The position numbers and the translations under genes were made by a program. DNA of 64,000 nucleotides, taken from Ostrea edulis (Eukaryota). Of the stretch, positions 12,790 to 19,029 are shown one piece after another (within the stretch, counting starts at the first letter, position 1; each line of letters opens with the position of its first letter). The notes beneath the pieces were generated by a model, which did not search any database, had not been told where the DNA came from, and saw only the letters and a program-made list of their open reading frames with translations. The stretch spans positions 29,388,001-29,452,000 of the forward strand of contig NC_079172.1 of NCBI RefSeq assembly GCF_947568905.1, given 5' to 3'.

Positions 12790-13735
12790 TCATATCCACC
12801 ATCAATTCTCTCAGATCCTTTGAATTTCTGTCGAAATCAGAAGAAAGTAAATGATATAAAATGCATCCAACTTGATCGCGACTTTTGGCGCATATATCTA
12901 AATTCTAGAGAAAGCAGACAGGTGTTAGTGGCAGAGGGATTTGAACTTCAACAGAGAACGATCAATGTGTTTGAAAATAATCCGTTTTCTGCGGGTACCG
13001 AGAAGCCCGACGAGGATATACTCCGAGTGACAATCCGAGGAGTCCCTTTATCTGTTGATGACAAATGTGTCACTGACATGTTAAGCAAACTAGGCGCTAA
13101 GCTCACGTCAGAAATCAAGTATGAGAAAATACGAAATCCGTCCACTAGGAAAATGACGGACATACGCAACGGAAACCGCTTCATATACATGCGACCCTTC
13201 CCTGATGGCAAATTCCTACCAAAATCAAGTTTTTGTGCTGGATTAAAGTGCTCTATATTTCATCGTGGCCAACCAAAACGAGAGAGAAAGCGTTGTACCA
13301 ACTGTTGGGGAGACGACCATATGAGGCATAAATGCGAATACGAATCCTGCTGTAAAGTTTGTCATGAATCTGGACACAAGCCGGGGTCCGAGGATTGTAG
13401 ACATTATGAAAACCGACAGAAGGTTGTGATTACTTTTGGCGGAAAAGATGACTCTCTATCTAATTTTTATGAGTGTGAGATAGATAATTTTGGATTCAAT
13501 CACCCTACTTCCGAACACGCATTTCAATATGCGAAGGCTATGAGGTCTGGAGACATGCTGCGAGCTACGAGCATTAGAGAAGCTGCCACCCCACTTGAGG
13601 CAAAACGGATCGGAAAACAAGTGACCACGACAGACCAGTGGGAAGACACAAAAGATGTGGTGATGCGTGAAATAATTGAAAAAAAATCAATCAATGCAGT
13701 GAACTTAAAGAACAACTATTAATCAAAGTACTGAA
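12790..13735 (+). CDS. Gag-like non-LTR ORF1 (RRM-like region + 2 CCHC zinc knuckles) fused to a NADAR/YbiA-like domain; 5' and 3' disrupted
   Basis: Knuckles CTNCWGDDHMRHKC and CKVCHESGHKPGSEDC (13294-13398). From 13435: FGGKDDSLSNFY...HPTSEHAFQYAK...IREAATPLEAKRIGK...QWEDTKDVVMREII, continuing after a frameshift as KINQCSELKEQLL. This matches the NADAR pattern FSNF / PTSEHYFQAxK / W..K..VM / KF.Q...L...LL. Confidence 0.8.
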
Positions 13736-14872: not shown

Positions 14873-16007
14873 GAACTATTCCGAATATTACAAGAGTTTT
14901 CAGATGCACTTTCTGCAATGAAAAATAATAAAAGCCCTGGTCTTGATGGACTACCAAGTGAGTTTTATAAAATGTTTTGGCCTAAACTTAAAAAACATTT
15001 CTTTTCTACCATTCAAAAAATCTTTTGATGATAATAAATTACCACTTTCTCAGAGATTGTCAGTTTTATCCATTATATACAAAAAAGGAGATAAAAATTT
15101 GCTAGAAAATTACAGACCAATTAGTTTGACTGACACTGACTACAAAATCATCGCATTTACTTTTGCAAGACGATTACAAAAAGTAATCAATAATTTAATA
15201 TCAAATGACCAGTCTGCATATATTAAAGGTAGATTTATAGGATTAAACGCAAGAATAATAGCTGATATCTTTAAACATTGGGAAAATTGTAATGAGGACG
15301 GAATATTATTATTTCTTGATTTTCAAAAAGCTTTTGATTCAGTGGAATGGAATTTTATGTTTAAAGCACTTAAATCCTTTAATTTCGGTATTAATTTCTT
15401 AAAGTGGCTGAACATTTTATATATAGAGCCTTTATTCAGAATGAAAAATAATGGGTGGATATCAAAAACCTGTAAAATGTCCCGGGGCATCCGTCAGGGG
15501 TGTCCCATTTCTGCTATAATTTTTTTGTTTGTTACTGAAATTCTTGCAATTCAGATTAGAAAAAGCAATAGCATCAAAGGTATTAACATGGTTAATAATG
15601 AGAAAGATAATGAAATTAGAATTGTCCAACATGCAGATGACTGTACACTCCCTTTAAAAGATGAAGTCTCAATGAATAATGCTCTAGATATCATAAATAA
15701 ATTTAGCTCCGTTTCGGGAATGATTCTTAACACATCCAAATCGGAAAGTATCTTAATGGGAAACCTAAAACATAATTATACGGATAACATTTGTGGAATA
15801 AATATAAATTCCTCTTGTGTAAAAACTTTAGGAATCTACATCGGTCATGATAAAACACTTTGTTATAAAAAATAATAGTTTGAATTGTATAAAAGACATG
15901 GAAAAACTTTTTGAGGCTTGGAAAACAAGAAACCTCACTCTCTTTGGAAAAACTTGCGTGATCAACACGTTAGCTCTATGTAAAACTTATACGGTACCAA
16001 TTTTGAT

Positions 16008-16051
16008 GCACCAGATGCGCATTTCGACAAATAATGTCTCTTCAGTGATGC
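16008..16051 (-). ncRNA. Minimal type I hammerhead ribozyme, copy 1
   Basis: Minus strand: GCATCA-CTGAAGA-GAC-ATTATTT-GTC-GAAA-T-GCGC-A-TC^TGGTGC. All core nucleotides are present, with stems I and II paired, a palindromic GCGC loop 3 and an AUC cleavage triplet. Confidence 0.88.
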
Positions 16052-16218
16052 TCAACCGAAATGTTTGAAATCCGAAATAACTATGAAGTTTTAGAGCTAA
16101 ATATAGCCAAAAACAGCGTGCCAATAAAGTAGAGCCAAATTTGTCCAAGGATAAGAGCTATACATGAGGGAGATAATCCTTAATTTTGAAATGAATTTCT
16201 AAATTTTATAACAGCAAT

Positions 16219-16762
16219 ACGCAAGATCGCGACTACTTTTTCCGTCTTGGTTTTAAATTTTACTTCCCCCTTTCAAAGTCTCGCGAGACCCAGAGTATGC
16301 GAGAATTTGGGCATGTTGGTAAATAATACCAGTTCTGCAACTTTTATCGTGATCGATTCACCCGATTTTAACAATGGTGTACTATCATTGCATTGCAGTA
16401 GACTGTAGTAATGATTCAAGAAAGAAACATAATACGCAGAAATATCCATAACTGATAGATTTTAATGGAAATGTGGTGGATTTTTTTCCCACTGCTGTCA
16501 GCCAGGAAATTCCCAAAGCTGAGAAGAGCTTGCGTCAAAATATATAGCTTCGCGAGCTAAATTCAGAAGTTCATTTTTCCTGTATCCAGACGTTTTTACA
16601 CACCTTTCATATAAAAATGCTTTTAATTGTGGAAAGCACATGGAGGTTAAATCGTCTTCCGATGCCATTGTTTTGAATAAACAAAAAATGCCCAAGATCG
16701 ACACGCTTTTCCGGACTTCTTTACAAGAGAGTTCCGCTAACGCGGTATTTACGATCTTGCGT
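16219..16762. mobile_element. ~545-bp non-autonomous DNA element inserted in retrozyme monomer 1, carrying a short gene fragment
   Basis: Inverted ends (AAT)ACGCAAGATCG...CGATCTTGCGT(ATT). The empty site CAGCAATTAAAT is seen in monomer 2. An internal minus-strand frame reads MASEDDLTSMCFPQLKAFLYERCVKTSGYRKNELLNLA. Confidence 0.8.
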
Positions 16763-16904
16763 ATTAAATATACATCCGTATTTTCAAGCTAGTGACGAAG
16801 TACTTAGCTAATGGGCTGTAGAGACCCTCGGGGACTAACAGTCCACCAGTAGAGGCCTCGACCCAGGAGTCATAATGTAAAACTTATACGGTACCAATTT
16901 TGAT

Positions 16905-16948
16905 GCACCAGATGCGTATTTCGACAAATAATGTCTCTTCAGTGATGC
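16905..16948 (-). ncRNA. Minimal type I hammerhead ribozyme, copy 2
   Basis: Identical to copy 1 except that loop 3 is ACGC instead of GCGC. Confidence 0.85.
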
Positions 16949-19029
16949 TCAACCGAAATGTTTGAAATCCGAAATAACTATGAAGTTTTAGAGCTAAATA
17001 TAGCCAAAAACAGCGTGCCAATAAAGTAGAGCCAAATTCGTCCAAGGATAAGAGCTATGCATGAGGGAGATAATCCTTAATTTTGAAATGAATTTCTAAA
17101 TTTTATAACAGCAATTAAATATACATCCGTATTTTCAAGCTAGTAACGAAGTACTTAGCTACTGGGCTGTAGAGACCCTCGGGGACTAACAGTCCACCAG
17201 CAGAGGCCTCGACCCAGGGGTCATAATGTAAAACTATCTAAGATTTTATATAGAATCTCTGTTCTCTCTTTACCATGCAATGAAGAATTAAAAACAATGA
17301 ATAGACTTATATTTAAGTTCCCATGGAATAAAACAGATCGTATAAAACGAAATACTTTAATACGTAGCATTAATGAAGGAGGTATTGGTGTGATAGACGT
17401 TGAGTCAAAATTAATGTCAATAAAAGCATCTTGGGTTGAAAAATTACTAAATTCAAAGGGAAAATTAAAGTCATATGTAGAATCCTTATGTCTGAAAAAT
17501 AATATTTATTTTAAATATATTCTAATTACCAATGAAACAGATTTGAAAAATTATGGCTTAATCAAAAACTTTCCAATTTTCTATCAACAAATTTTTATAT
17601 GTTCCAATAAATGTAAACAGAGACAAATGCATTTATCAGCTACAAAATTCTTACAACAACCAATATGGAATAATAAATTATTCACATATAAAGGTAAGTC
17701 ACTATATTTCCCTGATTGGATTAAAAGTAATCTGCTCTATGTCAAAGATATATGTGACTCAAGTGGTCTAAAACCTGCTAAATGGTTTCTTGATAATTTA
17801 AAATACAAAAGTAATTGGATTTGCCAATATAAAATTTTATATTCAGTCTTTAGAGAATTTATAAACAAATATGATCTTTCAATTGTTCCATTTATCACAA
17901 ACTCTCCAATAATCCCTCGCTTTCAGTACGGCAACAAACTATTAGACTTAAGCAAAGGTATTTCAAAAATATTTTACAAAATTTTATGCAATAAAAAATC
18001 ACGTACACCTATTTATCAGTCATTCTATGAAAGAGAATTTCATATTCAGTGTAAATCATCATGGGTAAAAATATATAGACATAAAATTGCAAATATTCTT
18101 GATAAAAAGGTTGCAGAGTTCAACTATAAACTTCTGAACAACTTGCTCAGCAATAATTTATTCTTAAGTAAATGCTGCCAAGATATAAGCAGTAAATGCA
18201 ACTCATGTCCAAATGAAACAGAAAATTGTAAACATTTAATATTTGATTGTTCAAATGTCAAAGATATTTGGAATTTGATAAGTTCCTCATTAAAATTTGA
18301 AATTAGCTGGAAACATATTGTTATTGGCTTCTATCAGGAAACAAATGACAAAATATCAGTTCTTAATATTTTAATTTCTTTCATTGCTTATCGTATATAC
18401 AAATTCAAAATGTTATGTAGACTCAATAGCAAAAATGAAACACAAGAAAGAGTTAAACAACATATAAAATATGAATTGCTAACATATCATAAAGTACTTA
18501 AGAAATGTAACACTCATAACTCGAATTATATAGACATTATATTAGGAATTTCGGATAAACTTTAATAAAATTAAATCAATGTACGAGACATTATCAGTAT
18601 TGTAACATACTTTTAATTAATATACATATATTTCTTACTATTCATCTGTATTTATTTGTAATCGATATGTTCACGTACAACATGTATTTAATTATGTAAA
18701 TGTAGTTTTACGAATGATATAAATCCACCTCTACTGGGAGAACATGGTCTCCCGGCTAGGATGCCCTAGGGTCATCTCTGGACTCTAGTTTGTGTGTGTG
18801 TGGACCCTGAGGCAGCATGAGTGGTATTATGTTTTAAGAAAATCCCTAGCTTTATTATATCTAACATTATGGCACTGTTGTAATCTACTAACTCATTGTT
18901 ACATTGATCATCATACAATATGAATACTGTATAACCTATATATTTAAATGTCAACTATGACAATATTACTCTGACATGCAATGAAATTTATGTATTCAAT
19001 GAATGTACATATACAATGAATGTAGATAT

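What the first reader, a model, noticed from the sequence alone, without database searches (positions are those of the whole stretch)
15979..17235. Tandem hammerhead-ribozyme dimer (retrozyme-like) inserted into a Tx1 RT gene
Seen in the sequence: two copies of a 351-bp unit each contain a complete minimal type I hammerhead on the minus strand (16008-16051, 16905-16948). Each has a CUGAAGA/GAAA core, AUC cleavage site and 2-bp stem III, and copy 1 has a palindromic GCGC loop. The block ends with a short terminal redundancy and splits the codons CTA|TCT of the RT. Established knowledge: minimal hammerheads with palindromic loop 3 occur in Penelope-like pLTRs and in 170-400 nt metazoan retrozyme repeats. 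They are thought to cleave as dimers and can yield circular RNAs, as reported in mussel. Inference: cleavage at 16911/16910 and 16014/16013 would release an 897-nt unit (351 nt plus the 546-nt insert), antisense to the RT. Copy 2's ACGC loop breaks the palindrome.
Basis: partly seen in the sequence, partly recalled or inferred. Interest (0 to 1): 0.7.

Follow-up and report, generated by a model that had tools for sequence, protein, structure and literature searches.

The report
Oyster hammerhead retrozyme copy in a LINE
This is one ordinary copy, two repeat units long, of a very abundant non-coding mobile repeat of an oyster genome that carries a self-cutting hammerhead RNA motif; it landed inside a LINE reverse-transcriptase gene and was later hit by a small DNA transposon.

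Summary
Window 15978-17235 holds two 351-bp units plus a 10-nt start of a third. My descriptor finds only these two sites in 64 kb (0.01 expected). Rfam Hammerhead_1 matches both end to end (31.2 and 27.5 bits, under its cut-off of 34).

Eleven paralogous LINE copies show the empty site. The insert is 1258 bp, splits CTA|TCT, and has no target duplication beyond an ambiguous AT.

The 546-bp "insert" in unit 1 is a separate inverted-repeat transposon (at least 340 dispersed copies). The 897-nt product is therefore peculiar to this locus; the family unit is 351 nt.

About 7,000 unit starts match an exact pattern genome-wide, and 23% follow another unit. All sampled copies share one fixed 3' end, 36 nt past the predicted cut. 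Their 5' ends vary. This is target-primed retroposition.

The ACGC loop of copy 2 is a rare variant (2%).

The element fits the metazoan non-LTR retrozyme kind (Cervera and de la Pena 2020). Circles, self-cleavage and the mobilising element remain untested. The scan found this family before in other windows of this genome. Low novelty.

The parts
15978..17235 (-). Whole retroposed insertion: 2 units plus 10 nt, 1258 bp including the nested element. The RNA sense strand is the minus strand. The AT at either junction is ambiguous.
   Evidence: empty site in 11 paralogues
15978..16217 (-). Unit 1, unit positions 1-240. This is the 3'-terminal unit in RNA sense and ends in the family's fixed 3' end (...GTATAAGTTTTACAT).
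16008..16051 (-). Hammerhead 1: helix I 6 bp, helix II 4 bp, helix III 2 bp plus a GCGC loop (the 8-nt palindrome AUGCGCAU). Predicted cut between 16014 and 16013.
   Evidence: Rfam RF00163 31.2 bits, E 1e-6
16218..16763 (.). Nested non-autonomous DNA transposon (544 bp plus a 2-bp AT, or 546 bp with no duplication). Terminal inverted repeats of about 14 bp, inserted in AA|TT.
   Evidence: At least 340 dispersed copies at 96-100% identity; junctions in 11 other copies; inverted repeat I3
16764..16874 (-). Unit 1, remainder (unit positions 241-351)
16875..17225 (-). Unit 2, uninterrupted, 351 bp
16905..16948 (-). Hammerhead 2, with an ACGC loop that breaks one pair of the palindrome. Predicted cut between 16911 and 16910.
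   Evidence: Rfam RF00163 27.5 bits, E 1.7e-5
17226..17235 (-). 10-nt start of a third unit. This is the 5'-truncated end of the insertion in RNA sense.
14943..15977 (+). Host LINE, RT domain upstream of the insertion. There is a frame change near 15850-15875.
   Evidence: Pfam RVT_1 E 1e-31; ORFs
17236..18565 (+). Host LINE, RT C-terminal part downstream of the insertion, in frame with 15847-15978
   Evidence: Pfam zf-RVT E 1.3e-4, 22.9 bits, below the curated cut-off of 27.5; atlas neighbours carry PF13966; ORF 17297-18565

Best explanation
Window 15978-17235 is one retroposed copy, 2.03 units long, of a young and very abundant 351-nt non-coding retroelement of an oyster genome.

Shown:
- The element's sense strand (the window's minus strand) carries one classical metazoan type I hammerhead per unit.
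- The copy landed without target duplication or deletion in the RT gene of a young LINE, antisense to it.
- A small inverted-repeat DNA transposon later inserted into unit 1.
- Copies across the genome share one fixed 3' end and have variable 5' ends that run across unit boundaries.

Inferred:
- The element is copied into DNA by target-primed reverse transcription from a fixed 3' start.
- The enzyme comes from an autonomous element, most likely a Penelope-like element.
- Tandem transcripts are cut by the hammerheads, which pair through the 8-nt palindrome AUGCGCAU to work as dimers. The products are 351-nt monomers that a host RNA ligase can close into circles, as shown for mussel, coral and axolotl retrozymes.
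- Copies longer than one unit arise because the template is circular, uncut, or reached by template jumping.

At this locus the two cut sites would release 897 nt, because of the nested transposon. The ACGC loop of hammerhead 2 weakens dimer pairing. This copy is therefore probably a dead end, not a source element.
For: - Motif: two descriptor hits against 0.01 expected per window. Rfam Hammerhead_1 matches full length at 31.2 and 27.5 bits. Rescaling the first E-value to one family and the whole 895-Mb genome gives about 0.003 chance matches (my arithmetic).
- Insertion: the empty site is present in 11 of 11 paralogous LINE copies.
- Family size: at least 658 first-look candidates, of which all 40 scored were 97-100% identical. 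Exact 28-specified-letter patterns count 6836 plus 134 unit starts, of which 1576 plus 34 follow a unit end.
- Retroposition signature: 28 loci all end at unit position 1, while the other end varies from 0.98 to 3.84 units. The count of a far-end pattern is 2766 against 6970 at the 3' end, so coverage falls away from the 3' end. Clear target duplications of 20 and 11 bp occur in 2 loci.
- Nested transposon: at least 340 candidate copies dispersed in the genome, the 40 scored 93-100% identical, with conserved termini in AA|TT.
- Dimer: cofolding two GCGC hammerheads gives -27.3 kcal/mol against 2 x -7.8 for monomers, with an 8-bp intermolecular helix III. The GCGC/ACGC pair gives -21.6.
- RNA: contigs from RNA libraries of two studies, plus a run of a third study whose RNA label is a guess, hold the unit. 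One 377-nt contig runs past the unit end into the next unit. The flanking LINE, with at least 153 copies, is uncovered in all four runs.
- Partner availability: Penelope-type GIY-YIG domains are abundant in this genome, with 1102 candidates and 150 scored above the cut-off.
- Literature: non-LTR retrozymes of 170-400 nt with type I hammerheads, including mussel repeats of 350-390 bp that make circRNA (PMC7229834). Helix I of 6 bp, helix II of 4 bp and a short palindromic helix III acting as a dimer (PMC4209133). A link between retrozymes and Penelope pLTRs (bioRxiv 10.64898/2026.07.22.740005).
Against: - No self-cleavage or circle was shown. The runs were assembled contigs, which give no strand, ends or joints.
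- The 351-nt circle folds no better than shuffles, z -0.34. Published retrozyme circles are described as highly self-paired.
- Both hammerheads score below Rfam's gathering cut-off.
- No autonomous element sharing the 3' tail or the hammerhead was found among 30 GIY-YIG loci.
- The high sequence identity of the hammerhead among copies reflects youth, not demonstrated selection.
- The fixed 3' end lies 36 nt downstream of the cut site. The template's 3' end is therefore not a hammerhead-made end.
Confidence: 0.85

Rival explanations
1. The element is a SINE-like repeat mobilised by a LINE rather than a Penelope-like element. It would be copied from linear transcripts whose 3' end is set by transcription (the sense strand ends ...AAGUUUUACAU, with a T4 run). 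The hammerhead would play no part in mobility.
For: A fixed 3' end with 5' truncation is equally typical of LINE-driven retroposition. No Penelope partner was found. Young LINE families exist in the genome, including the host element, with at least 153 candidates and most of the 40 scored about 98% identical.
Against: There is no poly(A) or microsatellite tail. Copies run through unit boundaries up to 3.84 units, and 23% of unit starts follow another unit. That needs a multimeric or circular template. BLAST of the unit against the whole window found no similarity outside the element. One locus has tandem and inverted pieces of the element side by side, as described for Penelope-like elements (L030; PMC8557442).
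Confidence: 0.12
2. The hammerhead-like motif is an inactive look-alike in an ordinary repeat, so no cleavage or circles occur.
For: The scores are below Rfam's gathering cut-off. The monomer hammerhead fold is no better than shuffles, z -0.05 and -0.6. All copies descend from one source, so they count as a single independent occurrence. Published minimal or dimeric hammerheads cleave poorly in vitro (PMC4209133).
Against: All 11 core nucleotides are present, along with the G10.1-C11.1 pair, helix sizes of 6/4/2 bp and the 8-nt palindrome of the classical metazoan motif. The rescaled chance expectation is about 0.003 for the whole genome (my arithmetic). The unit size and tandem form match the mussel retrozymes (PMC7229834). 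The unit is present in RNA libraries while the flanking repeats are not.
Confidence: 0.05
3. The two units arose at this locus by DNA-level tandem duplication of a single inserted unit (satellite-like expansion). They were not copied together from RNA.
For: The units differ at 7 positions. Six of these are private to unit 1.
Against: The 10-nt third-unit stub, the fixed 3' end and the variable overall length are the same pattern seen at 28 other loci, from 0.98 to 3.84 units. The private changes are explained as well by later mutation.
Confidence: 0.03

Closest known systems
Metazoan non-LTR retrozymes (Cervera and de la Pena 2020, PMC7229834), especially the 350-390-bp Mytilus galloprovincialis repeats
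   Same: Type I hammerhead in each unit. Short AT-rich non-coding units (351 bp, 38% GC). Dimers to multimers dispersed in thousands of copies. No LTR, PBS or PPT. Target duplications absent or longer than 4 bp. Occurrence in a bivalve.
   Different: The sequence is species-specific. Circles and cleavage are not shown here. The predicted circle is not unusually stable.
Newt satellite 2 and Schistosoma Sm-alpha type hammerheads (the Rfam Hammerhead_1 architecture)
   Same: Helix I 6 bp, helix II 4 bp, and a 2-bp helix III with a palindromic loop. Helix III is read by the Rfam model as a loop-less 4-bp palindrome, which is the dimer form.
   Different: 31.2 and 27.5 bits, under the gathering score of 34. 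Loop 2 is UUAUU. Tertiary loop contacts were not assessed.
Penelope-like elements and their pLTR hammerheads (PMC4209133, PMC8557442)
   Same: Partial tandem copies, 5' truncation, variable or absent target duplication, and occasional inverted pieces. The hammerhead lies near the 3' end, and 36 nt lie between the cut and the 3' end (compare the 30-40-bp 'tail' of Penelope-like elements). GIY-YIG elements are abundant in the same genome.
   Different: There is no ORF. The hammerhead has the classical architecture, not the min-HHR with a long helix II. No autonomous element with a related terminus was found.
Plant LTR retrozymes (PMC4918200)
   Same: Non-autonomous, hammerhead-bounded unit with a proposed circRNA intermediate
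   Different: Those have type III hammerheads, LTRs, PBS/PPT, 4-bp target duplications, GC above 55%, and Gypsy as the mobiliser.

Membership tests
Metazoan non-LTR retrozyme | A type I hammerhead in every repeat unit | tested here: met
   Of 49 hammerhead-like sites in 29 other loci, about 45 pass the descriptor.
Metazoan non-LTR retrozyme | Short tandem units of about 170-400 bp, dimers to multimers, with low GC | tested here: met
   351 bp and 38% GC. Copies of 0.98-3.84 units.
Metazoan non-LTR retrozyme | Non-coding, without LTR, PBS or PPT | tested here: met
   No ORF of 60 aa or more lies inside a unit. The ends are a fixed 3' end and a truncated 5' end, not LTRs.
Metazoan non-LTR retrozyme | Expressed as unit-length linear and circular RNA | tested here: inconclusive
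   RNA-library contigs of two studies, plus one run only guessed to be RNA, hold the unit, and one contig wraps 16 nt past a unit end. Contigs show neither ends, strand nor circles.
Metazoan non-LTR retrozyme | Self-cleavage at the hammerhead | not testable with these tools
   Needs in vitro transcription or raw-read end mapping.
Non-autonomous derivative of a Penelope-like element | Sequence related to the pLTR or 3' end of an autonomous Penelope-like element of the same genome | tested here: inconclusive
   No similarity in 30 GIY-YIG loci with 1.5-kb flanks. The intact 787-aa family could not be fetched.
Non-autonomous derivative of a Penelope-like element | Penelope-type insertion anatomy: partial tandems, 5' truncation, variable target duplication | tested here: met
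   The same anatomy, apart from the tandems, also fits LINE-driven retroposition.
Rfam RF00163 Hammerhead_1 | Score at or above the curated gathering score (34 bits) | tested here: not met
   31.2 and 27.5 bits, full-length matches, E 1e-6 and 1.7e-5 on 71-nt stretches.
Tx1 clade of LINEs (host gene) | RT phylogenetically within Tx1, with an APE endonuclease and a C-terminal zinc finger | not tested
   Only RVT_1 (E 1e-31) and a sub-threshold zf-RVT match (E 1.3e-4, 22.9 bits against a cut-off of 27.5) were shown. No tree was built.
Plant LTR retrozyme | Type III hammerheads in LTRs, with PBS, PPT and a 4-bp target duplication | tested here: not met
   Type I motif, no LTRs, and no target duplication at this site.

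The most novel reading that the evidence does not exclude
The fixed 3' end lies 36 nt downstream of the ribozyme cut, and copies run through up to 3.8 units. This could mean that reverse transcription starts at a defined internal site of a circular 351-nt RNA and goes round it. If so, these thousands of young insertions with recoverable empty sites would be a direct genomic record of rolling-circle target-primed reverse transcription of a ribozyme-made circle.
Probability: 0.25. Interest if true: 0.5.

Novelty: new member of a known kind. Interest (0 to 1): 0.25.

Why it matters
It adds an oyster family to the known hammerhead retrozymes. The family is very young and abundant, with about 7,000 intact unit starts and about 2% divergence. 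Exact empty sites are recoverable because many copies sit in other young repeats. That makes the genome a convenient place to study how such elements are primed and integrated, and which autonomous element moves them. For genome annotation the practical point is that Rfam scans at default settings miss the motif. The locus itself is an ordinary nested-transposon pile-up with no sign of host function.

Tried and rejected
(1) Rfam scans. The whole-window scan, the 1.4-kb scan and the whole-genome RF00163 search gave nothing. Only 71-nt stretches recovered the motif.

(2) Terminal-unit hypothesis. I asked whether the 3'-terminal unit preferentially carries the non-palindromic ACGC loop, which would protect the tail from cleavage, or whether mixed arrays argue against rolling-circle copying. 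In my 28-locus sample the terminal units had T at unit position 43 in 15 of 26 cases, against 3 of 16 for upstream units.
- Genome-wide exact counts reject the idea. ACGC accounts for 134 of 6970 unit starts (2%).
- ACGC starts follow another unit 25% of the time, and GCGC starts 23% of the time.
- The sample was biased by using the window's ACGC unit as query. The variant fits scattered later mutation.

(3) "All copies are at least one unit long." This was also sampling bias. The far-end pattern count is only 40% of the 3'-end count.

(4) Enrichment of 5' ends at the cut site. No sampled 5' end lies exactly there; three lie 3-6 nt upstream.

(5) Unusual stability of the monomer circle. z is -0.34.

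(6) Autonomous partner. Thirty GIY-YIG loci held no related tail or hammerhead. One unrelated minimal hammerhead turned up in L065.

(7) A partial unit-like piece in L082 and a 93.5% variant in L061 are just older copies, not partner termini.

(8) The PsiU2 scaRNA hit in the nested element (16.2 bits, E 7.3) is chance.
Full report
**What is there.**
- Reading 15700-17500 and the repeat finder show that 15978-16218 repeats at 16875-17115 (99%), and 16763-16884 repeats at 17114-17235 (97%).
- Pairwise alignments resolve this into two 351-bp units, the first interrupted by about 546 bp, followed by a 10-nt start of a third unit (ATGTAAAACT).
- On the minus strand each unit reads GCAUCA-CUGAAGA-GACA/UUAUU/UGUC-GAAA-U-GCGC-A-UC|UGGUGC. 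That is helix I of 6 bp, a G10.1-C11.1-closed helix II of 4 bp, a 2-bp helix III with a 4-nt loop, and a cut after C17.
- This is the classical metazoan type I architecture described in PMC4209133: helix I 6 bp, helix II 4 bp, and a short helix III with a palindromic loop.

**Is it more than chance?**
- A descriptor of my own found exactly the two reported sites in 64 kb. It found 0.01 per first-order Markov shuffle of the window, and a relaxed version added nothing.
- Rfam found nothing in the whole window, in 1.4 kb or genome-wide.
The scores are 31.2 bits (E 1e-6) and 27.5 bits (E 1.7e-5), against a gathering score of 34.
- Rescaled to one family and 2 x 895 Mb, the first E-value is about 0.003 (my arithmetic). 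The motif is therefore significant even genome-wide, though formally below Rfam's cut-off.

**The insertion site.**
- The flanks are a LINE. RVT_1 (E 1e-31) lies upstream and a sub-threshold zf-RVT match (E 1.3e-4, 22.9 bits against a cut-off of 27.5) lies downstream. The atlas search agrees with zf-RVT.
- The LINE is itself a young family, with at least 153 candidates, most of the 40 scored about 98% identical.
- Eleven of eleven paralogues read ...TTAGCTCT|ATCTAAG....
- The RT frame continues across the insertion. The 'Tx1' assignment was not tested.

**The 546-bp insert.** It is an independent element.
- It has at least 340 candidate copies elsewhere, and the 40 scored are 93-100% identical.
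- The copies have conserved termini (about 14-bp inverted repeats beginning AATACGCAAGATCG) and always sit in AA|TT.
- Unit 2 preserves the empty target CAGCAA|TTAAAT.
- The 897-nt inter-hammerhead distance is therefore an accident of this locus. The family unit is 351 nt.

**The family.**
- The unit has at least 658 first-look candidates, and all 40 scored were 97-100% identical.
- In 28 fetched loci every copy ends at unit position 1. On the hammerhead strand this is the fixed 3' end ...GGTACCGTATAAGTTTTACAT.
- The other end falls anywhere, giving lengths of 0.98-3.84 units.
- Clear target duplications (20 and 11 bp) occur in only 2 loci.
- Exact pattern counts give whole-genome figures. There are 6836 unit starts with the GCGC loop and 134 with ACGC. 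Of these, 1576 and 34 are preceded by a unit end.
- A pattern at unit positions 288-336 occurs 2766 times.
- Coverage thus falls away from a fixed 3' end and runs on through unit boundaries. This is the signature of target-primed reverse transcription with 5' truncation on a multimeric or circular template.
- The predicted cut lies 36 nt upstream of that 3' end, so the template's 3' end is not made by the ribozyme.
- For comparison, PMC8557442 describes a 30-40-bp 'tail' and partial tandem or inverted copies for Penelope-like elements. L030 shows such an inverted arrangement.

**Two ideas tested and dropped.**
- In my sample the ACGC variant looked enriched in terminal units, and arrays looked mixed. 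The genome-wide counts show ACGC is a 2% variant that is no more terminal than GCGC, so the sample was biased by my query. Copy 2's ACGC is a rare variant consistent with later mutation.
- The impression that all copies exceed one unit was also sampling bias.
- Separately, unit 1 carries six private substitutions and unit 2 none at those sites. This is a marginal asymmetry that I did not pursue.

**Mechanism.**
- Cofolding shows that two GCGC hammerheads form an 8-bp intermolecular helix III: -27.3 kcal/mol against 2 x -7.8. The GCGC/ACGC pair loses this (-21.6). That is consistent with dimer-dependent cleavage, as published for such motifs (PMC4209133, PMC7229834).
- The 351-nt circle is 64% paired but no more stable than shuffles, z -0.34.
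- RNA evidence is weak. All available runs were assembled contigs.
  - Three runs on record as RNA, from two studies, hold the unit; a fourth run from a third study also does, but its RNA label is a guess.
  - One 377-nt contig continues 16 nt into the next unit.
  - The flanking LINE is uncovered in all four runs.
  - This fits expression but shows no strand, ends or circles.
- Penelope-type GIY-YIG domains are abundant in the genome.

**Comparison and verdict.**
- The element meets the testable defining features of metazoan non-LTR retrozymes (PMC7229834). It resembles the mussel repeats in size and host group.
- A recent preprint argues that such elements derive from Penelope pLTRs (10.64898/2026.07.22.740005). 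That link is plausible here but unshown.
- Earlier notes of this scan had already described the same family in other windows of this genome and called it ordinary. My independent tests agree.
- Those notes name the host a flat oyster. I did not verify the species. The genome is 895 Mb in 52 contigs, and RNA holders are labelled mollusc.
- Novelty: a new member of a known kind. Interest is low.

Noticed in passing
window 16218-16763; L032-L042: A 544/546-bp non-autonomous DNA transposon with about 14-bp terminal inverted repeats (AATACGCAAGATCG...). It always lies in AA|TT, with either a 2-bp AT duplication or none. There are at least 340 candidate copies, the 40 scored 93-100% identical, so the family is very young. 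Its superfamily was not determined.
   Followed up: partly
window 12820-13719 (+): An ORF upstream of the LINE RT carries a NADAR domain (Pfam PF08719, E 6e-11). This is unusual for a LINE ORF1. Another note of the scan also flags it.
   Followed up: no
window 15978-16874 versus 16875-17225: Unit 1 has six private substitutions (five of them transitions) relative to about 40 other family units. Unit 2 has none at those sites. The asymmetry is marginal (about p 0.03) for two units of the same age.
   Followed up: partly
window 15850-15875: The host LINE changes reading frame here: ORF 14943-15875 against 15847 onward. This copy was therefore already or later broken, apart from the insertion.
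   Followed up: no
L030 (G000:C9:38264577-38267926): Retrozyme pieces in inverted orientation flank a tandem copy. This tandem/inverted complex is like those described for Penelope-like elements.
   Followed up: no
L065 2745-2783 (-): A different minimal hammerhead-like motif (helix I 5 bp, AGCGCU palindrome) lies about 1 kb from a GIY-YIG domain. It is possibly a Penelope pLTR ribozyme of another family.
   Followed up: no
G000 C1:110503255-110516013 and about 20 other places: A GIY-YIG element family with identical domain scores and open frames of 787-840 aa. It is often found in tandem (3717-bp spacing) or in head-to-head pairs. It looks like a currently intact Penelope-like family and is the first candidate to check as mobiliser.
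   Followed up: no
run X5, window 15944-16065 and 16859-16980: In a run of 88 million letters and unrecorded library type, summed contig depth over the hammerhead end of the unit reaches about 77,000. Over the nested transposon it is about 100, and over the LINE it is 0. This may be a small-RNA or otherwise enriched library.
   Followed up: no
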